Shown: piece after piece, positions 1 through 63,601 of the stretch
Position numbering within the stretch: the stretch's first letter is position 1
Layout of the letters: each line of letters begins with the position of its first letter
NCBI RefSeq assembly: GCF_006345805.1
Contig: NC_042997.1
Span: 49,104,001-49,168,000 of the forward strand
Source of the DNA: Octopus sinensis
Taxonomy: Eukaryota
Reading direction: 5' to 3'
Length of the DNA: 64,000 nt
The notes under the pieces: model-generated
Told to the model about the DNA's origin: nothing
Seen by the model: only the letters and a program-made list of their open reading frames with translations
The model's database searches: none
Made by a program: the position numbers and the translations under genes

Positions 1-264
1 CAGAAACTGAAAGAAGTCTATCATCATCATCATCATCATCGTTTAACATCCGTTTTCCGTGCTAGCATGGGTTGGACGGTTCGACCAGGATCTGGGAAGC
101 CAGGTGGCTGCACGAGGCTCCAGTTTGATCTGGCAGTAAGCAGTATAACCCGGCTTTACCTGGGACTAAGTTAGGATTATTAAGCTAATCAAGTTCTTTA
201 TTTCATACCAAACTAAGTAATATCGACGTCGAATTTAGGCGAAATCCGTTGCTATTGGTTTATA

Positions 265-266
265 CA

Positions 267-319
<53 letters not shown>

Positions 320-359
320 TGTGTGTGTGTGTGTGTGTATATATAAGTATATATATATG

Positions 360-390
<31 letters not shown>

Positions 391-536
391 ATATAAGTAT
401 ATATATATGTATATATATATGTATATATATGTGTGTGTGTGTATATATATGTATATATATATAATGTGTATATATGTATATATATATATGTGTGTGTGTG
501 TGTGTATATATATGTATATATATATATGTGTGTATA

Positions 537-579
<43 letters not shown>

Positions 580-582
580 ATA

Positions 583-654
<72 letters not shown>

Positions 655-670
655 TATATTATATAATATA
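265..670. repeat. Compound (TA)/(TG) microsatellite
   Basis: Direct inspection. Confidence 0.97.
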
Positions 671-1392
671 AATAATATAACACATACGTACGAACATACA
701 CCTATTGCATGTATGTTTTTTGTACGCATACATGTTCATAAACAGAAATGAATGGAAAAAATGTTGGTAAATTTGTAGATTGACACTCACATGATTTTCA
801 CTAAGAAAAAAAATTGGATTTTTTGTGTGGAATCAACTACTCTGGCCTCCTAATATGCTACAAAAGCCCTTTTTGTGGTCTGAAAAAGGGGGTCAGGTGT
901 GGTGGAAGCCTCAGAAATTGTACCAAATTGTTACCTACCTCTTTGTTTCTTTGTAGTTAAATAAATGGATTCTCAACAAAACACTTTTTTCCTTGGCGTA
1001 AAATAAAAACAAAACTCTTTCGCGCCCAAAGTAATGTGTGTGTGAGATGGGGGAGAAACATGAACGATTTAAAATAAATATAGGATTTAAAATATATTTT
1101 AACTGTTTTGTGAGAAAGTATATATAATCTGATTAGGAAATATAGTGCCTTTCAAAAACATTCAAAATTTGAAGACTATATCTCGTGTTTAAGAAAACAA
1201 CAAAACATTTTACACTCTCTCACTTTGTCTTTACCTTTTTTTGTTAGATGCTGTCAAACACATTCTCTTTCTCTCCCTGACACACACACACATACATCAA
1301 CACACAACTCATATATATATACATACATAGATATATACATATATACATATACACACACAGACGCACACATAAATACAAAGCGTAACACACAC

Positions 1393-2943: not shown

Positions 2944-3058
2944 CCTTGAGAGTTTTCAGGGTTTCTTGAGCTTCTTTTAGAATAGCTTCACCTTTTTCTA
3001 CAGCTTCCTTAGCTTTTGAATTAGCCTTGAAAATGTCTGACATCAACTTATCTGTTTC
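2944..3058 (-). CDS. LAMC1: Laminin gamma exon, coiled coil (not in ORF track)
   Basis: ETDKLMSDIFKANSKAKEAVEKGEAILKEAQETLKTLK; ctgtag| and |gtaggt; phase 0 to 1. Confidence 0.9.
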
Positions 3059-3148
3059 CTACAGTGATGGAGTAGAAATAAAGATTGTAAATTAGAACAG
3101 TGGTTATGTTGACAGTAATGAAATGATGTGTGTGTGTGTGTGTGTGTA

Positions 3149-4080
3149 CATCATCATCATCATTGTTCGAACGTGGTCGAGACAATGGAATTTACTATAT
3201 TACGCCAGACTTCACGGTCCATCATAGCATTACGGAGGTCCTGTTGCTGGATGCCTGTATCCCTGGAGATTACATCAGGGTACGAGAGTGTGCGCCCTCT
3301 GGTATTGCGAGTAGATGGCTTCCAGAGGAGAAGAGTAGAAATGACTTCTTTTTCAGTTCTACAACAATGTCAGGCAAACTGGACTCTCCTACCTTTCACA
3401 AGAGATGACACAGGTGGTAGTTTCCCATATATTTGCATTTTGGTTGGATGGCGCCTCCACGAGAGATTTTGAGCTCTCATAAGGAGGCGAGTGTAGGTTC
3501 CATCCAACTGCCTCTCAAGCTTCTTTGATAACGTCCAGGTTTCTGAGCCATATAGTAGAATTGGTTCGACTGTTGCTTTGAATATTTCAAGTTTGAAGTC
3601 TCTACTTAGATTTGATGACCAGATGTTATGCATGTCATTACAGGCTGACCAGGCCATACCCTTTCTAGTTAGAAAGTCTTTTCCAGATGATGATATGTAT
3701 GGCGCAAGATATTTGTAATTAGAAACCATATTTAAAGGTGCACTGAGGAGAGTATGGATGATGCAATCACTGTTGGACAGGCACTTGTTTATGTATTCAG
3801 TTTTGACCTCATGGAGGTAAAGACCTACACAATTTGAGGCTTGTTCAAGAGATTGTAAAAGAGACTGGGCATTGGAGAGAGAATCACTGATAAAAGCGAT
3901 GTTGTCAGCAAAGTCAGTGTCTGTCAAGTACTCAGCTGGGTGTCTGGAACTTCTTCTTGGTTTTATTTCAAAGCCCTTGCCAGAGATGGTATCAACTGAC
4001 ATATGTAGCACATAATCAACAACAATGATGAAAAGAAATGGGGCGAGTGTGTCTCCCTGCAGTATTCCGGCTTTGATTGT
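3149..4080 (-). mobile_element. 5'-truncated non-LTR retrotransposon (RTE-related), RT C-terminal half
   Basis: GILQGDTLAPFLFIIVVDYVL, DTDFADNIA, LLYGSETWTL; frame resumes after one TGA and ends directly in a (GAT)n tail. Confidence 0.88.
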
Positions 4081-4574
4081 GTGTATATACATACATGTGC
4101 ATGTGTGAATTTGTCTATATATAAATGTATACATGTATGATTGGATGCTGAAAAGTTCCTGGCTTCAAGGGTATTGCTAAAGCCCTTGTTGGAGGTCCAA
4201 CCGTCCGAGTTCTGAAGGACCACTGCAACAAGTGTATGATTCTGAGAGAGGAATATGGTGAACAGAATCATAATTAACTGATCCTCCTGTATTTTCTTCT
4301 ACCCAAAGCCAGGAACTCTTCAGCCCCCTGTCATATGTTTGTGCCTGTATATAAATGTACATATAAAAAGTACAAGCATGGCTGTGTGGTAAGTGGTTTG
4401 CTTTCCAATCACACAGTTTCAGGTTCAGTCCCACAACACAGTATATTGGGGAACTATCTTCTACTATAGCCCCAGACCAACCAAAATCTTGGGGGTGAAT
4501 CTGGTAGATAGAAACTGAGATAAGCCCATTGCACGTGTGGGTGTACATATGTGTATGTGTGTACATATCTATAT

Positions 4575-4809
4575 ATAACGTGACAGTCTCGTAGAGGGAA
4601 TTGCACCACCGCTATATAGCCCTAGGAATCATCGTCGCTTCCTGTCAGCTTTGACACATTTCCTGTTGCTAGTCCTAGCTGGTGGGGGTGCTTGCCTCCC
4701 CTTTGCAAATATAAGGACACAGGAAATGTGTCAAAGCTGACAGGAAGCATCGATGATTCCTAGGGCTAAACAGCGGTGGTGTAATTCCCATACGGGACTG
4801 TCACGTTAT
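4575..4809. mobile_element. MITE with ~90-bp imperfect TIRs
   Basis: ATAACGTGACAGTC...TTTCCTGT mirrored by ACAGGAAA...GACTGTCACGTTAT. Confidence 0.75.
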
Positions 4810-4880
4810 GTTGACTTTATACAACCATTATATCGCTCCACCGCTGCTCATGTCTTGTTGAGACATTTAGAAATTCAATA

Positions 4881-4912
<32 letters not shown>

Positions 4913-4944
4913 GTTGATATGTACACACATATCTCGATGTGGAT

Positions 4945-5675
4945 AGCTGTGTAAAAAAGTGCCACACCCTAGCAGTTGAGGGAACCTGTGGAAGAGGTAG
5001 ACCCAAGAAGACCTGGGATGAGGTGGTGAAGCAATGACTAGTGACCGGGACCTTTGGAAATATGCTGTGCTTGAGAAGACTCGGCAAGCTCAAGTGAGAC
5101 CATAAACCTTGTGGTCTATGTCAGGGGTGTAACCAGCCCACTTATGTGTACCTTTCCCTCATTGGACACTAAACTCTGCTTGCGAAGACCTGTTGAGGCA
5201 AGTGAAATTGAAATCAAGTTTGATGACTGGCATCCGTGCTAGTGGAGCGCAAAGAGTACCATACAAGCGTGATCATTGCCAGAGCAACAAGCTGGCCTCC
5301 GTGCCGATGGCACATAGAAAAGCACCATTCGAGCGTGATCGTTACCAGTCGCCTTACTGGCACTTACTGGCACGTGAAAAAACATTCGAATGAGGTCGTT
5401 GCCACTGCCGCTGGACTGGCTCCTGTGCAGGTGGCACATAAAAAACACCATTTGAGCGAGGTCGTCGCCAGTACCGCCTGATTGGCCCTCGTGCCGGTGG
5501 CACGTAAAAGCACCCACTACAATCTCAGAGTGGTTGGCATTAGGAAGGGCATCCAGCCATAGAAACTCTGCCAGATCAGATTGGAATTTGGTGCAGCCAT
5601 CTGGTTCACCAGACCTCGGCCAAATCATCCAACCCATGCTAGCATGGAAAGCGGATGTTAAATGATGATGATGAT
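4945..5675 (+). mobile_element. 5'-truncated RTE copy (ORF C-terminus plus 3' UTR of a related subfamily)
   Basis: First ~100 bp match 55790-55870 (CACACCCTAGCAGTTGAGGGAACCTGTGGAAGAGGTAGACCC); about 60-bp UTR repeats; same (GAT)n tail. Confidence 0.85.
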
Positions 5676-5939
5676 ATATATATTTCCCCATACATATATT
5701 GGCAGATATGGTATAAACCCAATGAGAAGATGATAACTCTACCATCAAACAAAATGGTAAGAGTTGAGAGCGGAAGCCATTCATTGTAAAGACAGACTTT
5801 AGATGTGATGAAGAAGATAGAAGATTGGAGTAAAACGGTAAATGCTGACCAACACAGCCAGGCCAAGAGGGAGACAAAATGGTTTAGAACTAAAAAAAAA
5901 ATGACGATTATATTTTTAGAACAATTTTTAACAACTAAA

Positions 5940-6207
5940 TTAAATCATACCTGTTAAATCATACCTAAAATTAAATCATACCTGTTAAATCATACCTAAA
6001 ATTAAATCATACTTGTTAAATCATACCTAAAATTAAATCATACCTGTTAAATCATACCTAAAATTAAATCATACCTGTTAAATCATACCTAAAATTAAAT
6101 CATACCTAAAATTAAATCATACCTGTTAAATCATACCTAAAATTAAATCATACCTAAAATTAAATCATACCTAAAATTAAATCATACCTAAAATTAAATC
6201 ATACCTG
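5940..6207 (-). repeat. Tandem array of 14-nt and 17-nt units, each containing the exon/intron junction motif
   Basis: Plus strand TTAAATCATACCTG (7 units, one variant) and TTAAATCATACCTAAAA (10 units); the last unit is the real donor of exon 6205-6327. Confidence 0.95.
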
Positions 6208-6327
6208 TTGCTTGTTTAAAGCATCTTCATAGAGAAGATTTGCCTTCCTCTTCTCTTCATCAACATCATTCAACATGTCATTGTTTGCAGTCAATGTTTC
6301 TTGTAGAGACTTCTGAATTTCATTAGC
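6205..6327 (-). CDS. LAMC1: Laminin gamma exon, coiled coil (41 codons, not in ORF track)
   Basis: ANEIQKSLQETLTANNDMLNDVDEEKRKANLLYEDALNKQQ; gtctttag| and CAG|gtatga; phase 0 to 0. Confidence 0.88.
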
Positions 6328-6760
6328 CTAAAGACAATACAATAAATATGATTTTTATGTGAGCCTAAATTGAAAATAGTTCATGAAATGAGGTTGTAAT
6401 AATTTGAAGTTGTATGCACTCTCAGACAGGTGCTTAAATATGTGTGTGTGTGTGCATGCTCGTGTGTTTGTTTGTTACAGGTAAAGGGAAACAAAATTAT
6501 GTATGTAAACCAAAGTTTTTCTCAAAAATATGAGACAAGCATTTGAACAAAGTTTTTTGCTTGGACAAGCAACTCAATTAATCTAACAATTGACAAACAT
6601 TTGACTCAAATGTTTTCTAATACAAGAGTGTACTGGTGATATTCACACTGCATTCAACTCCATCCTCATCTCAAATCATCTATCACACTCACTTCATTCT
6701 GGCACACTTTCCTACCCACTCATATTTTTTCTTCTGTCCCATTAACTTCACATATTTACT

Positions 6761-13361: not shown

Positions 13362-14612
13362 TTAGGTTGTTCCGAAAATAATGGCCGATTTCAGAAACAT
13401 AATTTTGTTTTGGAAAAATTAAAAATAGAAATGTTTTGATTAGTCTGAGCCGTGAACGTCAATCAACGAGATTATTTATGCCTCGTTGACAAAAACTTAT
13501 TGGCTTTGATTCTAAGAAATCTTTGAAAGCTGATTCCACCTCTGGTTTGGACCTGAAAAATTTATATCTTAAAAACGTGTTTAAATACTTTAAAACATGG
13601 TAGTCAGTGGGTGAAAGATGAGGAGAATATGGCGAATGTGGCAAAGTCTCATTTCCCAAGTCTGTGAGTTTCTACAGCATCATTCTTGCAACTTGTAGCT
13701 TTGCATTATCATGGAGCAGAATTGGACAATGCCAATTCACCAATGCAGGTCTCAGTTTTTTTTTGCGAGTGAGCATGCATGTCAGCAAGTTGATTGCAGT
13801 AAACCACTGCTGTAATGCTCTGATTGGATTCCAGAAAGCTGTAATGGACAACACCTATTGCTGACCACCAGAGAGTCACCATAATTCTTTGCTGATGCAA
13901 CTTTGGCTTTGAGAAATGTTTGGGAGACTCATCACAATCAAGCCACTGACCTGATCATTTACAGTTATCATAAAGGAACCACTTTTCGTCACAAGTGACT
14001 ATTCGGTCAACAAAAGGATCATTGGTGTTTCACAGAAAGAGCATTGAGTACACTTCAAAATGCTGAACTTTTTGATTTTCAGTGAGCTCATGCAGTACCC
14101 GTTTATAGCGCTTTTTCACCTTACCAATCTTCTGCAGATTGTGTGAGACTGTTGCAAAACCAACACCAAGTGATTGAGATATTTCTCTGCTACTTTGACA
14201 TGGGCTTTGTTCAACAATTGCATTCAAGATTGCATGACCGTCTTCTACCATCTTCATCCACAAGGCTCGCATGACCACTATGGAATTTTTTAAACCACCT
14301 TCGTACTGTGCGAACAGTTGTAGACCCCTCTATCCATGTTCTGTTAATATTGGCAGCAGTTTGGGAGGCATTGTGCCCCAGCTTGAACTCATGCAAGAAA
14401 AGTTAGCAAAAGTCCTTTTTTGTCATGTTCATAATTAAGGGCGCTTATGCTTCAAGAATGTTTTCTGTTAGAAATAAGTAGACAATTATTAAAGAGCATT
14501 CATCAATTATTAAGTAGGTCGAAATTCACCTCAAATATAATTAAAATACTATGATAGAATTGCCTTTCGAAACACAACACTTAGAGTGGCCATTATTTTC
14601 AGAACAACCTAA
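13362..14612 (-). mobile_element. Full-length decayed mariner transposon with TIRs and TA TSD
   Basis: TA|TTAGGTTGTTCCGAAAATAATGGCC ... GGCCATTATTTTCAGAACAACCTAA|TA; fragments HEFKLGHNASQTAANIN, VRRWFKKF, MVTLWWS, ILLHDNA, PHSPYSPHLSPTDYH; stops and frameshifts. Confidence 0.92.
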
Positions 14613-20682: not shown

Positions 20683-20723
<41 letters not shown>

Positions 20724-20800
20724 TATACACACATATATGTATATATATCCACATACATATATATACACACACATATATATATATATATATACATATATAC

Positions 20801-20831
<31 letters not shown>

Positions 20832-20855
20832 CATATATATATACTACATATATAC

Positions 20856-20888
<33 letters not shown>

Positions 20889-21032
20889 CATATATATATA
20901 CATATATAATATATATACATATATACATACATATATATATACATATATATAATATATATACATATATATATATATATATACATAGATACATACATATATA
21001 TACATACATATATATTATATACATATATATAT

Positions 21033-21076
<44 letters not shown>

Positions 21077-21140
21077 CATACATATATATACATATATATA
21101 CATATACATACTATATATATATACATATATATATATATAC

Positions 21141-21181
<41 letters not shown>

Positions 21182-21310
21182 CATACATATATATATATAC
21201 ATATAAATATATATATATATACATACATATAAATATATATATATACATACATACATACATGTATGTGTGTATATATATGTGTGCATGTGCATGCATGTGT
21301 GTGTGTATAT
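20683..21310. repeat. Compound (TA)/(TACA) microsatellite, ~630 bp
   Basis: Direct inspection. Confidence 0.97.
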
Positions 21311-28092: not shown

Positions 28093-28117
28093 CTATGGAG
28101 AAAAACAAAGGTAAGAT

Positions 28118-28855
28118 ATGTATAAAGAGAAGAATCAAGAGTCGATGAAAAAGAGAAGGAAACAGGAGACTCAAGAATCAAATGAAGAGGAGAAATGGGA
28201 GAGTCAAAAGTTAATGAAGAGAAAGAAACAGAAGAATCAAGAGTCAATGAAGAGAAAGAAAGAGAAGAATCAAGAGTCAATGAAAAAGAGAAGGAAACAG
28301 GAGACTCAAGAATCAAAAGAAGAGGAGAAATGGGAGAGTCAAAAGTTAATGAAGAGAAAGAAAGAGAAGAATCAAGAGTCAATGAAGAGAAAGAAAGAGA
28401 AGAATCAAGAGTCAATGAAAAAGAGAAACAAACAGGAGACTCAAGAATCAAAAGAAGAGGAGAAATGGGAGAGTCAAAAGTTAATGAAGAGAAAGAAACA
28501 GAAGAATCAAGAGTCAATGAAGAGAAAGAAAGAGAAGAATCAAGAGTCAATGAAAAAGAGAAACAAACAGGAGACTCAAGAATCAAAAGAAGAGGAGAAA
28601 TGGGAGAGTCAAAAGTTAATGAAGAGAAAGAAACAGAAGAATCAAGAGTCAATGAAGAGAAAGAAAGAGAAGAATCAAGAGTCAATGAAAAAGAGAAACA
28701 AACAGGAGACTCAAGAATCAAAAGAAGAGGAGAAATGGGAGAGTCAAAAGTTAATGAAGAGAAAGAAACAGAAGAATCAAGAGTCAATGAAGAGAAAGAA
28801 ACAGAAGAATCAAGAGTCAATGAAGAGAAAGAAAGAGAAGAATCAAGAGTCAAGG
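28118..28855. repeat. Minisatellite: 27-bp units in a 135-bp higher-order repeat (~5.5 copies)
   Basis: GGAGACTC recurs at 28165, 28300, 28435, 28570 and 28705. Confidence 0.95.
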
Positions 28856-28959
28856 TCAGAGTATAAGTAATAAATCAATTAAAAGTATAACAAAACAATA
28901 AAAAAAAAGAAATAAAAGAAAAGCAAAAAAATATAATAGTAAAAAAGAAAATCTAATAC

Positions 28960-30289: not shown

Positions 30290-30730
30290 GTACATGAACA
30301 TCGAAATAAATATCAATGGAAATAGTAGTTGTGATACCTGTGTCGGTGGCACATAAAAAGCACCATCTAAACGTGGCCGTTGCCAGCGCCGCCTCGACTG
30401 GCTTCTGTGCCGGTGGCACATAAAAAGCACCATCCAAACGTGGCCGATGCCAGCGCCGCCTTGGCTGGCTTCCGTGCCAGTGGCACGTTAAAAGCACCAA
30501 CCGATCGTGGCCGATGCCGGACTCCCCTGGCACCTGTGCAGGTGGCACGTAAAAAGCACCCACTACACTCACAGAGTGGTTGGCGTTAGGAAAGCCATCC
30601 AGCTGTAGAAACACTGCCAGATCAGACTGGAGCCTGGTGCAGCCCCTGGCTTCCCAGACCCCGGTCAAACCGTCCAACCCGTGCTAGTGCGGAAAACAGA
30701 TGTTAAACGATGATGATCATCATCATCATA
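30290..30730 (+). mobile_element. RTE 3' UTR fragment
   Basis: GGTGGCACATAAAAAGCACC repeats and tail like 57400-57625. Confidence 0.8.
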
Positions 30731-33115: not shown

Positions 33116-33252
33116 CATTGCTGAACTGGCTGAGAATTGAGCGACCATAGAATCCATTCGCAGATTGACAAGAGGAAGAATGACCATAACAGAAACAGGC
33201 AATGCAGCCAAATTTATTGCTTTCTTCCATTCCAAAGAAACCATTTTTACAC
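33116..33252 (-). CDS. LAMC1: Laminin gamma exon, end of LE4 and half-LE5
   Basis: CKNGFFGMEESNKFGCIACFCYGHSSSCQSANGFYGRSILSQFSN; AAG acceptor, |gttcgt donor; phases match neighbours. Confidence 0.88.
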
Positions 33253-34634: not shown

Positions 34635-35110
34635 TCATCATCATCATCGTTTAACATCCGCTTTCCATGCTAGCATGGGTTGAACAATTTGACTGAGGGC
34701 TGGTGAACCAGATGGCTGCACCAGGCTTCAATCTTGATCTGGCAGAGTTTCTACAGCTGGATGCCCTTCCTAACGCCAACCACTCCGAGAGTGTAGTGGG
34801 TGCTTTTACGTGCCACCAGCACAGGGCCAGTCAGGTGGTACTGGCAACGACCTCGCTCGAATCTTTTACACATGCCAGTAAGGCAATGCTGGTAATGATC
34901 ACGCACGAATGGTGTCTTTTACGTGCCACTGGCACGGAGGCCGGTTAGCCTCTCTGGCAACGATCACGCTCGGATGGTGCTCTTAATACCCTACCAGCAA
35001 AGGGCTCGAGTGCCAGTAAGGTGACGCTGCTAACGATCACACTTGAATGGTGCCTTTTAAGTGCCACTGGCACGGAGGCCGGTTAGCTGCTCTGTCAATG
35101 ATCACACTCA
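34635..35110 (-). mobile_element. RTE 3' UTR fragment
   Basis: Reverse complement of the RTE tail and about 60-bp repeats. Smaller tail fragments also at ~21-135, 15535-15625, 17930-18070, 21311-21356, 25900-26010, 47020-47162, 62560-62682. Confidence 0.8.
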
Positions 35111-35393
35111 TATGGTCCTCTTGGCATGGACTGGCCTCACAAATACCATCTGACTAACATAAAAGTGGATATTAAGCAATGATGGTGATGATGTGTATGT
35201 GTATACTACATACATGTGCATGCATATTCAAGGACTACAGGTGAAAAAAATGATTCAGTGAAAATGAGCTGCAGAAGGTTGAAAGCCAGTTTTAAACAAT
35301 CACAAAAGAATTTGTACATATGTCATGTAAAAGAATTTATATAATTTTAATATTATTGAAAAAGGAAATATAAAAATAATTCTCTTCTATTAC

Positions 35394-55955: not shown

Positions 55956-57625
55956 TCAGGCCATAACCCGTGGCCCCGACCGGGGACGTAGTCAGTCCTG
56001 TGCATACCTTCCTTCTTGTGACACTTATGAAGACCTGTTGAGGCAAGTGAAAATCAAATCAAATCAAAACAAATCAAAATAGATGAACATCAGTGGAATT
56101 GTATTCTTCGTGGTACCAGTGCCGGTGGCACACAAGAAAACCACCCAAACGTGGCCGTAACCAGTACCGCATCGACTGGCCTCCGTGCTGTGGGCACAAC
56201 ACACACCATCCGATCGTGGCCGTTCGCCAGCCTCATCTGGCACCTGTGCCGGTGGCACATAAAGACACCATCCGAAGACCCGGCGACGTAGTCAGTCCAC
56301 CTGTGCATACCTTCCCTCTTATGACACTTGTGAAGACCTGTTGAGGCAAGTGTGTGACACTTGTGAAGACCTGTTGAGGCAGAGGCAAGTGTGTGACACT
56401 TGTGGAGACCTGTTGAGGCAAGTGTGTGACCCTTGTGAAGACCTGTTGAGGCAAGTGAAAATCAAACCAAATCAAAATAGATGAATATCAATGGAATTTG
56501 TATCTTTGTGGTTCCAGTACCGGTGGCACACAAGAAAACCATCCGAACGTGGCCGTCGACTGGCCTCCGTGCTGTGGGCACAACAAACACCATCTGATCG
56601 TGGCCGTTCGCCAGCCTCACCTGGCACCTGTGTCGGTGGCACATAAAAACACCACCACCATCCAAAGACCCGGCGACGTAGTCAGTCCACCTGTGCTTAC
56701 CTTCCCTCTTATGACACTTGTGAAGACCTGTTGAGGCAGAGGCAAGTGTGTGACACTTTGTGAAGACCTGTTGAGGCAGAGGCAAGTGTGTGACACTTGT
56801 GGAGACCTGTTGAGGCAAGTGTGTGACACGCGTGACACTTGTGAAGACCTGTTGAGGCAAGTGAAATCAAACCAAATCAAAATAGATGAACATCAATGGA
56901 ATTTGTATATTTGTGGTTCCAGTACCGGTGGCACACAAGAAAACCATCCGATCGTGGCCGTTCGCCAGCCACATCTGGCACCTGTGTCGGTGGCACATAA
57001 AGACACCATCCGAAGACCCGGCGACGTAGACAGTCCACCTATGCATACCTTCCTTCTTGTGACACTTGTGAAGACCTGTTGAGGCAAGTGAAAATCAAAT
57101 CAAATCAAATCAAATCAAATCAAATCAAAACAAATCAAAATAGATGAACATAAATGGAATTTGTATCTTTGTGGTACCAGTGCCGGTGGCACACAAGAAA
57201 ATCATCCGAACGTGGCCGTAGCCAGTACCGCATAGACTGGCCTCCGTGCTTTGGGGACGTAACAAACACCATCCGATCGTGGCCGTCCGCCAGCCTCATC
57301 TGGCACCTGTGTCGGTGGCACATAAAAACACCATCCGAGCGTGGCCGTCTGCCAGCCTCGTCTGGCACCTGTGTCGGTGGCACATAAAAACACCATCCGA
57401 GCGTGGCCGTTCGCCAGCCTCGTCTGGCACCTGTGTCGGTGGCACATAAAATCACCCACTACACTCTCGGAGTGGTTGGCGTTAGGAAGGGCATCCAGCT
57501 GTAGAAACACTGCCAGATCTGACTGGCCTGGTGCAGCCTTCGGGCTCCCCAGACCCCAGTTGAACCGTCCAACCCATGCTAGCATGGAAAACGGACGCTA
57601 AATGATGATGATGATGATGATGATG
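52852..57625 (+). mobile_element. RTE-clade LINE, near full length, intact ORF, long repetitive 3' UTR, (GAT)n tail
   Basis: APE endonuclease and RT motifs in one uninterrupted ORF; 3' end CATGCTAGCATGGAAAACGGACGCTAAA(TGA)n; possible 7-bp TSD ATGAATA at 52845-52851 and 57626-57632. Confidence 0.93.
55977..57440 (+). repeat. Nested tandem repeats in the RTE 3' UTR
   Basis: Four ~300-420-bp modules starting near 55977, 56277, 56667 and 57016, with ~30-37-bp, (CAAAT)n and ~62-bp sub-repeats. Confidence 0.9.
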
Positions 57626-61774: not shown

Positions 61775-63493
61775 TTGAATACTACTTTGATCTGCTATTC
61801 ACAGTTACACACTTACAGAACAATTGTATGGAGCATTCTACAGGATGTTGCAGAAAATGTCATAAAAAGTAACCAACATTAACAACACTGAAGTTTACTA
61901 GTGTTACAACACCTTTTTCTTTCTTTCTTTTTTTTTTTACTGTTTAAAATGTACTTTTACAAACAATTTTGCAGCATTTTTATTTTAGACAAGAAGAGAT
62001 AAAACCCAGGTTATTCTTTAAAGCAACATTTAATATAAGATAATATGTGATCTTGAGATAGGTTTGATTACTATTTCTAGCAGGTCAGACTCCCAAACAG
62101 GTCTCCCTTGCTGGCTTATGTACACATACAAATACACACACACACACACAGACACACACACATACATAAGATGTGTGGACATACACACATACATAAGACA
62201 GAAAGGTGTGGGTTGAGGAAGATTTGGTTGCTATTTTTAGCATGTTTAGCTGCCAAGTAGTGATTCACTTGTTGACACATGCATGCATACACATACACAC
62301 AATTTTAAGGTAGTAATTATTATTATTGGCAGATGAAACAGCAGAAGCCTTACACCAAAAGTTGGATACATTCCTGATAATCTGTTCTGATTAACTTCCA
62401 AGCAATAAAATATTTTCAATCAATCTTTTATATTTTATCTTCTTTTAATTCATTTTAATGATCATCATTCATAATCATTACGAGCAGCAACTAGCCATAA
62501 ATAACTACAGAAGCAACACTCAAATGGTTTGTAAGATGCATACACATGTATTTTGGGCATCCACCCATAGAAACCACACCAAAATAGACTATGGAACCTG
62601 GTGCAGCCCCTGACCTTACCAGAACCAGTCAAGCCATCAAACCCATGTCAGCATGGAAAGTGGATGTTAAACGATGATCATGATATACACACACACAATT
62701 TGATCCTATATTTGATCCTATATACACAATACAAGGTAATCCCCACAATCAAGAACCCTACATGGCATTATTGCAATTCTTTGTTAACCCAGGTCTGTCT
62801 GTTCAACATGACCATGATCCCAGGGTCTCCAAGTTTTCGTCATCCCTTCTTTGTGTTTCCAGGCCATATGGTGAGGTATGATCTGGCTGCTGTAGACGCT
62901 CACATAATTCATGTTATTCATATAGGATAGGACTCCCTTCAGTTATGAATGACCATGGATTGCACCTAGAAAGCTCCTCTTCCAAGTAAGTTTGCTTATG
63001 GAAGACCAACAGTCAGCTTTGCATACCAACCTCCCCTCTCCATGCCACCAATGTTATCCAAGGGAAAGGCCAATACAGCTTGGCACTAGTGATGTCGCAA
63101 CTCATTTCTATCAATGAGAGAACTGGAGCAACATGAAATAAAGTGCTTTGCTCAAAAACACAACACACAGTCCGGTCCAGCAATTGCATAATTGTGAGCC
63201 CAGTGCTCTAACCAATGAGCTATGTGCCTTTATGTTGTTGTTCAAGGGAATATAGAAATATAGTTTATGGAACTAGTTTGGTTGAAGAAGCCACCAAAGG
63301 AAAGGAAAGCAACCAGTCTAACTCCTCAATTGGTGCAAGTCAGTACCAGATTCTTTGTAAAGGTTTACAGTGTTTACATTGCAAAAGGCATTCACAGGAA
63401 AGCGATTATTTGTAGTAGTAGAAATTTCCTAACAATACATCAAAATTGTTTATACAACTAAAGTGTCTTACTCACATACATTATATATATATG

Positions 63494-63532
<39 letters not shown>

Positions 63533-63601
63533 TACATGTATGCATATATATATACATGTATACATATATATACATGTATACATAGATATACATTCGCTGT
63601 A

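What the first reader, a model, noticed from the sequence alone, without database searches (positions are those of the whole stretch)
5940..6207. Exon-intron junction amplified into a 17-unit array of splice donors and AG|GT sites
Seen: on the minus strand the true junction CAG|GTATGA is followed by 16 more units, either CAGGTATGATTTAA or TTTTAGGTATGATTTAA. Fifteen of these retain AG|GTATGA and one reads AA|GTATGA. The 17-nt unit gives TTTAATTTTAG|GTATGA, which is an acceptor abutting a donor. The exon ends in phase 0, so use of any downstream donor reads GTA TGA, an immediate stop. Known: juxtaposed 3'ss/5'ss motifs define recursive splice sites, and premature stops trigger NMD. Inference: this may be a U1-binding decoy or enhancer array, a recursive-splicing ladder, or a copy-number-variable dial on productive laminin splicing. 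It may also be neutral slippage.
Basis: partly seen in the sequence, partly recalled or inferred. Interest (0 to 1): 0.7.

Follow-up and report, generated by a model that had tools for sequence, protein, structure and literature searches.

The report
Repeated splice donors in octopus laminin
The first 14-17 bases of one intron of the octopus laminin gamma-1 gene are copied head-to-tail 17 times, so the real splice donor is followed by 16 look-alikes; this kind of minisatellite is already known from several human genes, and nothing here shows that it has a function.

Summary
On the minus strand, GTATGATTTAA occurs 17 times between 6204 and 5940. The copies are joined by TTTTAG (10), CAG (5), CAA (1) or TTTAG (last). 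The motif occurs nowhere else in the 64 kb.

The gene is laminin subunit gamma-1 of Octopus sinensis. Splicing 6205->3058 (phase 0, intron 3146 nt) reproduces the annotated protein exactly (…ALNKQQ|ETDKLM…). That junction is colinear, without a gap, with gamma-1 chains from oyster to fish. Any downstream donor would add GTA TGA, which is Val then stop.

This architecture is a known kind: a minisatellite that starts at the exon-intron boundary and reiterates the donor. It is described for human F7, IFI6, CBS, LMNB2, PDGFA and ABCA7. In those genes the most upstream donor is used, sometimes with leakage to the next one or two.

The AG|GT "acceptor-donor" junctions follow automatically from duplicating a unit that starts with GT and ends with AG. 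The sites lie 17-254 nt into a 3.1-kb intron and have weak pyrimidine tracts, so a recursive-splicing role is unlikely. The 11-nt core is invariant in all 17 copies, which points to a young or homogenised slippage product.

Transcript use and copy-number variation could not be tested. Verdict: real, ordinary, a new member of a known kind.

The parts
6205..6327 (-). Laminin gamma-1 coding exon (123 nt, 41 codons, phase 0 at both ends): ANEIQKSLQETLTANNDMLNDVDEEKRKANLLYEDALNKQQ
   Evidence: 100% tblastn match to residues 1471-1511 of O. sinensis XP_029636725.1. Exact spliced solution.
6199..6207 (-). Authentic 5' splice site CAG|GTATGA (cleavage between 6205 and 6204). It matches the CAG|GTAAGT consensus at 7 of 9 positions.
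   Evidence: Duplex with the U1 5' end is -8.5 kcal/mol, mid-range among the gene's 18 donors in the window (-3.6 to -12.4).
6199..6201 (-). In-frame TGA, read if any downstream donor is used or the intron is retained (GTA TGA = Val-stop)
6137..6204 (-). Proximal block of four 17-nt units (GTATGATTTAA+TTTTAG). The pseudo-donors at 6187, 6170, 6153 and 6136 read TAG|GTATGA.
   Evidence: These donors match 6 of 9 positions, -6.4 kcal/mol.
5935..6136 (-). Distal block dominated by a 31-nt higher-order repeat (14-nt unit + 17-nt unit). The pseudo-donors at 6122, 6074, 6043, 5981 and 5950 are identical to the authentic site from -5 to at least +14 (to +28 for the first four), beginning AACAG|GTATGATTTAA. 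The last unit ends in TTTAG and runs into unique intron sequence.
6013..6013 (-). The only point substitution in the array: G->A at position -1 of pseudo-donor 13 (CAA|GTATGA)
3059..6204 (-). Intron (3146 nt, phase 0). It holds the array at its 5' end, then a repeat element with 66-nt internal repeats (5292-5509) and a reverse-transcriptase fragment (3370-4134).
2944..3058 (-). Next coding exon (115 nt): ETDKLMSDIFKANSKAKEAVEKGEAILKEAQETLKTLK; acceptor ...CATCACTGTAG|GAAACA

Best explanation
This is a young intronic minisatellite made by replication slippage or unequal exchange at the very start of an intron of the Octopus sinensis laminin gamma-1 gene. The unit begins with the GT of the donor, so each copy carries a pseudo-donor. 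The unit ends in AG, so each joint reads AG|GT. The most upstream (authentic) donor at 6205|6204 is the one used to make laminin gamma-1. The 16 pseudo-donors are silent, or used at a low level that yields Val-stop transcripts expected to be removed by nonsense-mediated decay. The array is therefore neutral or slightly deleterious, is probably variable in copy number, and has no dedicated function. Shown: the array, its position, the gene, the junction that gives the annotated protein, the stop, and donor strengths relative to the gene's other donors. Inferred: that the first donor wins in vivo by position (as in human F7), that leakage is low, that the array is polymorphic, and that it has no function.
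For: The array and its exact start at the donor are shown. The gene is laminin gamma-1: 16 of 16 fully resolved exons are exact substrings of O. sinensis XP_029636725.1. Only 6205->3058 reproduces the annotated protein. O. vulgaris, O. bimaculoides and Argonauta hians models have the same ...KQQ|E(T/A)DKLM join. The join is gap-free against gamma-1 chains of oyster, snail, spider, insects, fish and Nematostella. The core GTATGATTTAA is identical in 17 of 17 copies (187 nt without a substitution), including positions irrelevant to splicing. There is a single point change in about 270 nt and a 31-nt higher-order period, which is the signature of recent expansion or homogenisation. The unit does not occur elsewhere in 64 kb, so it is not a transposon tail or satellite family. 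Minisatellites are common in this window, with about a dozen arrays of period >=10. No RNA structure masks the pseudo-donors: the array folds worse than all 100 shuffles, z +2.81. Precedent: in human F7 IVS7 the identical pseudo-sites of a junction-spanning VNTR are functional but unused because the most upstream site wins. The same architecture is reported in IFI6, CBS, LMNB2 and PDGFA (PMC1557585) and in ABCA7 (PMC5954066).
Against: No transcript reads were available, so use of the first donor rests on gene models and homology. Those would not reveal a minority of NMD-sensitive isoforms. In IFI6, CBS and ABCA7 the nearest one or two pseudo-sites are in fact used, so some leakage is likely here too. 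In CBS and ABCA7 repeat length correlates with activity or splicing, so 'no effect' cannot be assumed. The spacing here (14-17 nt) is tighter than in F7 (37 nt). The first-donor rule has been tested only in mammalian cells. Conservation and polymorphism could not be examined.
Confidence: 0.7

Rival explanations
1. Copy-number dial on productive splicing. A fraction of transcripts uses pseudo-donors and is destroyed by NMD (or the array lowers splicing efficiency or promotes skipping of a neighbouring exon). The fraction depends on array length, so laminin gamma-1 output varies with the allele.
For: Every pseudo-donor gives Val-stop. Five pseudo-donors are identical to the authentic site from -5 to at least +14, and ten more differ only at -3. 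Human precedents exist. The second-unit donor of the ABCA7 VNTR is used, gives a premature stop, rises under cycloheximide, and VNTR length correlates with exon-19 skipping and lower expression. The 31-bp CBS VNTR is associated with reduced activity (title cited). The two nearest IFI6 pseudo-sites are used constitutively.
Against: There is no expression or population data. The four nearest pseudo-donors are the weaker TAG type, and the first identical copy is 82 nt away. In ABCA7 the pseudo-donor isoform itself did not change with VNTR length. Even if true, such an effect would more likely be a side effect than a selected regulator, given the array's apparent youth.
Confidence: 0.13
2. U1-recruiting enhancer or decoy. 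The cluster of U1-binding sites just downstream of a middling donor raises local U1 concentration and helps define the 123-nt exon, or alternatively it competes with the true donor.
For: The authentic donor is non-consensus (GTATGA, 7 of 9). There are 16 further U1-complementary sites within 254 nt, and the RNA is unstructured and so accessible.
Against: The donor is mid-range for this gene, and weaker donors in the same gene (for example GTTCGT and GTATTA at 33116 and 28960) have no such array. The uniformity extends to non-U1 positions. The F7 study found no autonomous regulatory element in the repeat context (section heading; discussion). Sites 14-17 nt apart probably cannot all be occupied at once (general knowledge of the U1 snRNP footprint; inference).
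Confidence: 0.07
3. Recursive-splicing ladder. The intron's 5' end is removed stepwise through the AG|GT joints, each step regenerating CAG|GTATGA.
For: Fifteen AG|GT joints are present. TTAAC/TTAAT branch-point-like motifs in each unit lie about 20-23 nt upstream of the next unit's AG. Joints at least about 68 nt from the donor are sterically conceivable.
Against: The AG|GT follows automatically from the unit's ends. The intron is 3146 nt and the sites lie in its first 254 nt, whereas known ratchet points sit in long introns (about 31 kb and 73 kb in the examples), are ultraconserved and have strong donors. Pyrimidine fraction upstream of the array AGs is 0.5-0.6 against a mean of 0.71 for real acceptors, and another AG lies 14-17 nt upstream of each. 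The donor is non-consensus. A zero-length recursive step here would change nothing in the mRNA.
Confidence: 0.04
4. Assembly artefact. The array or its copy number is produced by long-read assembly or polishing error.
For: Tandem arrays are places where copy number is most often misassembled (general knowledge). No reads were available to check.
Against: The array has ordered internal structure: two unit types, a 31-nt higher-order period and one point variant. It has clean unique flanks, and it lies inside a gene whose 16 resolved exons are all exact. Errors might change the count but would not create the array.
Confidence: 0.04

Closest known systems
Human F7 intron 7 VNTR (37 bp x 5-9), Borensztajn et al. 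2006, PMC1557585
   Same: It is a minisatellite whose first monomer spans the exon-intron boundary. The authentic donor is followed by pseudo-donors of identical sequence, the donor is non-consensus, and only the most upstream site is used physiologically. No masking secondary structure was found there, and none here.
   Different: The F7 unit is 37 bp with 4-8 pseudo-sites. Here the units are 14 and 17 nt with 16 pseudo-sites in a mixed higher-order pattern. In F7 some pseudo-sites would keep the frame, whereas here every one gives an immediate stop. Use and polymorphism were demonstrated in F7 and are untested here.
Human ABCA7 intron 18 VNTR (25 bp, 12 or more units), De Roeck et al. 2018, PMC5954066
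   Same: The array starts exactly at the GT of the donor. Use of the next unit's donor retains one unit, giving a premature stop and NMD.
   Different: The ABCA7 unit is C-rich and the array can be very long. Its length is linked to skipping of the downstream exon and to disease risk. None of this is known for the octopus array.
Human IFI6 (6-16) intron 2 minisatellite (25 pseudo-sites; 12-nt unit from my own recollection), Turri et al. 1995, cited in PMC1557585
   Same: It is a short-period array reiterating the donor many times. Its tight spacing is comparable to 14-17 nt.
   Different: There the two nearest pseudo-sites are used constitutively, and (from my own knowledge) they add in-frame residues. 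Here any use is out of the reading frame's reach because of the TGA at codon 2.
Human CBS exon 13/intron 13 31-bp VNTR; LMNB2 100-bp and PDGFA 81-bp junction-reiterating repeats (cited in PMC1557585)
   Same: These are repeats that reiterate the exon/intron junction. CBS shows leakage to two pseudo-sites and an association of length with enzyme activity.
   Different: The units are longer and the genes are vertebrate.
Drosophila/vertebrate recursive splice sites (ratchet points), PMC8605326
   Same: Both show a juxtaposed acceptor-donor motif AG|GT.
   Different: Ratchet points are single, ultraconserved sites deep in long introns, with a strong pyrimidine tract and a strong regenerated donor. 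Here there are 15 young copies within 254 nt of the donor of a 3.1-kb intron, with weak tracts.

Membership tests
Junction-reiterating intronic minisatellite (F7 / IFI6 / CBS / LMNB2 / PDGFA / ABCA7 type) | Head-to-tail array of a 10-100-nt unit | tested here: met
   TRF reports 5937-6209, period 31 (14+17) x 8.6 at 92% matches. There are 17 units.
Junction-reiterating intronic minisatellite (F7 / IFI6 / CBS / LMNB2 / PDGFA / ABCA7 type) | First monomer contains or starts at the authentic exon-intron boundary | tested here: met
   Unit 1 starts at 6204, the G of the donor that reproduces the annotated protein. The 14-nt units also repeat the exon's last 5 nt, AACAG (AACAA in one).
Junction-reiterating intronic minisatellite (F7 / IFI6 / CBS / LMNB2 / PDGFA / ABCA7 type) | Donor consensus reiterated in the following monomers | tested here: met
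   There are 16 further GTATGA copies: 5 with an identical 9-mer, 10 TAG|GTATGA and 1 CAA|GTATGA.
Junction-reiterating intronic minisatellite (F7 / IFI6 / CBS / LMNB2 / PDGFA / ABCA7 type) | Most upstream donor is the one used in the mature mRNA | tested here: inconclusive
   This is supported by annotated proteins of four octopods and a gap-free alignment across phyla. No transcript reads were examined, so minor isoforms are invisible.
Junction-reiterating intronic minisatellite (F7 / IFI6 / CBS / LMNB2 / PDGFA / ABCA7 type) | Copy number varies among individuals (VNTR) | not testable with these tools
   No other octopus genomic DNA could be fetched. Gene ranges are 130-214 kb, and DNA pattern scans of the collections found nothing.
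Recursive splice site / ratchet point | Juxtaposed strong 3' splice site (pyrimidine tract, AG) and strong 5' splice site | tested here: not met
   AG|GT is present, but the pyrimidine fraction is 0.5-0.6 against 0.55-0.90 (mean 0.71) at the gene's real acceptors. Another AG lies 14-17 nt upstream of each. The donor matches 6-7 of 9 positions.
Recursive splice site / ratchet point | Located within a long intron (tens of kb), far from the donor | tested here: not met
   The intron is 3146 nt and the sites lie 17-254 nt from the donor. The criterion is from PMC8605326.
Recursive splice site / ratchet point | Motif conserved across species; saw-tooth or lariat intermediates | not testable with these tools
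   No orthologous introns or RNA data were reachable.
NMD-coupled unproductive splicing (poison splice site) | Alternative site introduces a premature stop upstream of further exon junctions | tested here: met
   GTA TGA follows the exon directly, and at least two exon junctions follow in the window.
NMD-coupled unproductive splicing (poison splice site) | Alternative site is actually used, and its use is regulated or conserved | not testable with these tools
   No octopus transcript fragments were found in the protein collection.

The most novel reading that the evidence does not exclude
The array is a length-polymorphic regulator of an essential basement-membrane gene. A copy-number-dependent share of laminin gamma-1 pre-mRNA is spliced from pseudo-donors (or through intra-array recursive steps) into Val-stop transcripts that are degraded. 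Octopus individuals or species would then differ in laminin gamma-1 dosage according to allele length.
Probability: 0.1. Interest if true: 0.55.

Novelty: new member of a known kind. Interest (0 to 1): 0.27.

Why it matters
As it stands, this mainly shows that junction-reiterating minisatellites, so far described in a handful of human genes, also arise in a cephalopod. It also offers an unusually dense natural test case for 5' splice-site choice outside mammals. The case has 17 donors 14-17 nt apart, and five of them are identical to the real one from -5 to at least +14. The read-out is clean, because every wrong choice gives an immediate stop. If the first donor is used exclusively, that extends the "most upstream site wins" rule to molluscs and to very tight spacing. 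If not, the locus would be a copy-number-dependent leak in an essential extracellular-matrix gene.

Tried and rejected
(1) Orthologous introns could not be fetched. The gene ranges of O. sinensis (about 214 kb), Argonauta hians (about 130 kb) and O. bimaculoides (about 193 kb) exceed the 100-kb limit, and the shorter O. vulgaris isoform is not on record.

(2) No transcript-derived fragments were found. A 461-aa C-terminal query gave no hit at E<=1e-10. Six ORFs flanking the array are not in the protein collection.

(3) Exact DNA scans found nothing. I scanned for the exon-end+donor 20-mer and for a two-unit 30-mer in the metagenome collection (two scans) and for the 30-mer in the genome collection (one scan), with 0 hits. 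This was expected, because those collections are essentially prokaryotic or environmental.

(4) A transposon tail or satellite family is rejected, because the unit occurs only in the array.

(5) A structured RNA, a known RNA family or an ADAR substrate is rejected. The array folds worse than all shuffles (z +2.81). No inverted copy of the unit exists in the window. Rfam gives no hit on the array, only sub-threshold matches of CA/TA-rich repeats to repeat-derived miRNA families elsewhere.

(6) A coding or alternative-exon reading is rejected, because all three sense frames of the array are full of stops.

(7) I did not compute Shapiro-Senapathy or MaxEnt scores, because the tables are not available offline. 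I used consensus matches and U1 duplex energies instead. The U1 5' end sequence was taken from general knowledge.

(8) Two upstream junctions (around 37314/35518 and 35393/33254) were not resolved exactly by my simple splice solver. They are irrelevant to the finding.

Full report

Yes. Reading 5700-6500 on the minus strand shows the exon end ...AAACAAGCAACAG followed by GTATGATTTAA repeated many times. A script finds 17 GTATGA copies. The G of GT lies at 6204, 6187, 6170, 6153, 6136, 6122, 6105, 6088, 6074, 6057, 6043, 6026, 6012, 5995, 5981, 5964 and 5950.

Parsed as units starting at GT, the 11-nt core GTATGATTTAA is identical in all 17 copies. The linkers are:
- TTTTAG, 10 times
- CAG, 5 times
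- CAA, once
- TTTAG, once, in the last unit, which runs into unique sequence

The unit-length pattern is 17 17 17 17 14 17 17 14 17 14 17 14 17 14 17 14 16. Tandem Repeats Finder calls 5937-6209 with period 31 x 8.6 at 92% matches, or alternatively period 17 x 16.9.

AGGTATGATTTAA (up to 1 mismatch) occurs 17 times in the window against 0.29 expected. All matches are in the array and on the minus strand.

**2. What gene, and is CAG|GTATGA at 6205|6204 the true junction?**

Minus-strand ORF pieces include laminin-type EGF domains (PF00053, E 2e-11). A concatenation of exon cores finds laminin subunit gamma-1 proteins:
- Magallana gigas, E 1e-57
- With a longer query, Octopus sinensis XP_029636725.1 (1790 aa, 97% to my rough model) and Argonauta hians (70%)

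tblastn places residues 452-1616 of the O. sinensis protein on 44.4 kb to 1.4 kb of the window. Exon 6327-6205 corresponds to residues 1471-1511 and exon 3058-2945 to residues 1512-1549, both at 100%.

A search over GT/AG pairs gives one exact solution for this intron. The last exon base is 6205, the first base of the next exon is 3058, the phase is 0 and the intron is 3146 nt.

All 16 exons with both borders resolved are exact substrings of the O. sinensis protein, and three differ from O. vulgaris. The window is therefore O. sinensis.

The O. vulgaris, O. bimaculoides and Argonauta models carry the same join...NKQQ|ETDKLM... or ...SKQQ|EADKLM.... In a MAFFT alignment the join is gap-free against gamma-1 chains of oyster, snail, spider, insects, sardine and Nematostella.

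These results rest on gene models and homology, not reads. They show which donor yields the functional protein. They do not show that no other donor is ever used.

**3. Consequences of using another donor**

The exon ends on a complete codon (CAG, Gln). Use of donor n inserts 17-254 nt that always begin GTA TGA, which is Val then stop. All three sense frames of the array are full of stops. At least two further exon junctions follow within the window. By general knowledge of NMD, such transcripts would be candidates for decay. If translated, the chain would lack its last 279 residues.

**4. How good are the sites?**

I compared each site with CAG|GTAAGT and with the U1 5' end (sequence taken from general knowledge).

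| Site | Consensus matches (of 9) | U1 duplex energy (kcal/mol) |
|---|---|---|
| Authentic donor | 7 | -8.5 |
| Five CAG-type pseudo-donors (6122, 6074, 6043, 5981, 5950) | 7 | -8.5 |
| Ten TAG-type pseudo-donors | 6 | -6.4 |
| CAA variant (6012) | 6 | -4.0 |
| Range for the gene's 18 donors in the window | 4-8 | -3.6 to -12.4 |

The authentic donor is mid-range for the gene. The five CAG-type pseudo-donors have the identical 9-mer, and are identical to the authentic site from -5 to at least +14 (to +28 for the first four).

The four pseudo-donors nearest the exon are all of the weaker TAG type. The first identical competitor is 82 nt downstream.

The array RNA is unstructured. Its MFE is -33.3 kcal/mol against -43.3 +/- 3.6 for shuffles (z +2.81), so no hairpin hides the pseudo-donors.

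As acceptors, the AG|GT joints are poor:
- Pyrimidine fraction in the 20 nt upstream is 0.5-0.6. The gene's 18 real acceptors range from 0.55 to 0.90, with a mean of 0.71.
- Another AG lies 14-17 nt upstream of each.
- TTAAC/TTAAT motifs could serve as branch points for the next unit's AG.

Splicing into the array therefore cannot be excluded from sequence alone.

**5. Origin**

The last unit ends ...GTATGATTTAATTTAG|TTGTTAAAAATTG. The likely single-copy ancestor is therefore CAACAG|GTATGATTTAATTT(T)AGTTGTT (inference).

A 17-nt unit running from +1 to +17 is bounded on both sides by AG. Slippage on that 2-nt homology duplicates it, and this necessarily creates AG|GT at each joint. The "acceptor abutting a donor" is thus a by-product, not evidence of design.

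The 14-nt unit (CAG+GTATGATTTAA) repeats the exon's last bases: AACAG is shared with the exon end. It is bounded by AA, so it may be a true copy across the junction. It could equally derive from the 17-nt unit by loss of TTT plus a T>C change. I therefore regard "junction amplified" as right in effect but only partly demonstrated in origin.

The terminal QQ of the exon is conserved across phyla. The exon end is therefore ancestral, and the repeat copies are derived.

There are zero substitutions in 187 nt of core, including +7..+11, which have no role in U1 pairing. There is one point change overall. This indicates recent expansion or ongoing homogenisation rather than selection on the donor motif.

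The unit is not found elsewhere in the window, so it is not a transposon tail. Minisatellites are frequent here, with about a dozen arrays of period >=10 in 64 kb. One of them is a 135-nt array filling another intron of the same gene.

**6. What is known**

Borensztajn et al. [quoted passage not shown] Their examples are:
- F7 IVS7: 37 bp x 5-9. Only the most upstream site is used. The pseudo-sites are functional when the upstream ones are inactivated. Pseudo-sites strengthened to a consensus value of 91 still do not compete.
- IFI6/6-16: 25 pseudo-sites, with the two nearest also used.
- CBS IVS13: two pseudo-sites are used. A 31-bp VNTR is associated with reduced activity.
- LMNB2 and PDGFA: only the authentic site is used.

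De Roeck et al. 2018 (PMC5954066) add ABCA7 intron 18. There a 25-bp VNTR starts at the GT of the donor. The second-unit donor is used, giving a premature stop that rises under cycloheximide. VNTR length correlates with exon-19 skipping and lower expression.

Recursive splice sites, by contrast, are single ultraconserved acceptor|donor pairs in long introns, with strong regenerated donors (PMC8605326). The present sites fail the context criteria: intron length, distance from the donor and tract strength.

**7. Most likely mechanism**

I commit to this reading: a young slippage-generated minisatellite that reiterates the donor. The first donor is chosen by position and exon context, as in F7. 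Pseudo-donors are silent, or leak at a low level into NMD substrates. There is no dedicated function (confidence about 0.7).

The rivals are:
- a copy-number-dependent effect on output (0.13)
- a U1 enhancer or decoy (0.07)
- a recursive ladder (0.04)
- an assembly artefact (0.04)

The steps that are shown and those that are inferred are listed under Best explanation.

**8. What could not be done**

No orthologous intron could be fetched, because the gene ranges are 130-214 kb and one isoform is not on record. No octopus transcript fragments were found. ORFs beside the array are not in the collection. DNA scans of the available collections found nothing. Conservation, polymorphism and actual donor usage therefore remain untested. 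The decisive analyses are listed separately.

**9. Verdict**

The finding is real and accurately described. It is not chance, but it is not new in kind. It is a cephalopod example of a junction-reiterating VNTR, and a notably dense one. Interest is modest (0.27). It would rise if reads showed regulated or allele-dependent use of the pseudo-donors.

Noticed in passing
window 28093-28959 (minus-strand intron); array 28124-28853: Another intron of the same laminin gamma-1 gene (867 nt) is about 84% filled by a 135-nt x 5.4 tandem repeat at 97% identity. The repeat is pyrimidine-rich on the sense strand, with repeated CATTGAC/CATTAAC motifs. It does not reiterate either splice junction.
   Followed up: partly
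window 3370-4134 (-): A reverse-transcriptase fragment (PF00078, E 3.8e-7), probably a LINE remnant, lies in the same intron as the donor array.
   Followed up: partly
window 13459-14396 (-): Mos1/mariner-type transposase remnants lie in a laminin intron, broken into several ORFs: HTH_48 (E 1.6e-11) and Transposase_1 DDE (E 2e-13).
   Followed up: partly
window 5292-5509, 30338-30560, 34873-35122, 56061-57456: A dispersed repeat family carrying internal 62-67-nt (and 135-405-nt) tandem units recurs four times. One copy lies about 430 nt downstream of the donor array in the same intron.
   Followed up: no
Proteins P0031 and P0032 (O. bimaculoides), corresponding to window ~2944 and ~8524: The O. 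bimaculoides RefSeq model reads into the intron after the exon equivalent to 3058-2944 (…TLRGRWSFSSFLISIF…) and lacks the DFDR exon. An older model ends in intron-derived residues after the exon equivalent to 8701-8524. These look like annotation errors in the relatives, and they are not at the array junction.
   Followed up: no
window 261-679, 20684-21278, 63482-63590: There are long (TA)n microsatellites of up to about 300 repeats, plus many CA/TA-rich stretches. The latter give sub-threshold Rfam matches to repeat-derived miRNA families such as mir-297 and mir-466, all far below gathering scores.
   Followed up: no
window ~37314-35393 and ~35393-33254 (-): My simple GT/AG solver did not reproduce two exon joins of the gene model exactly, although the flanking exon translations match the protein. 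This is probably a frame-anchor problem in the script rather than biology.
   Followed up: partly
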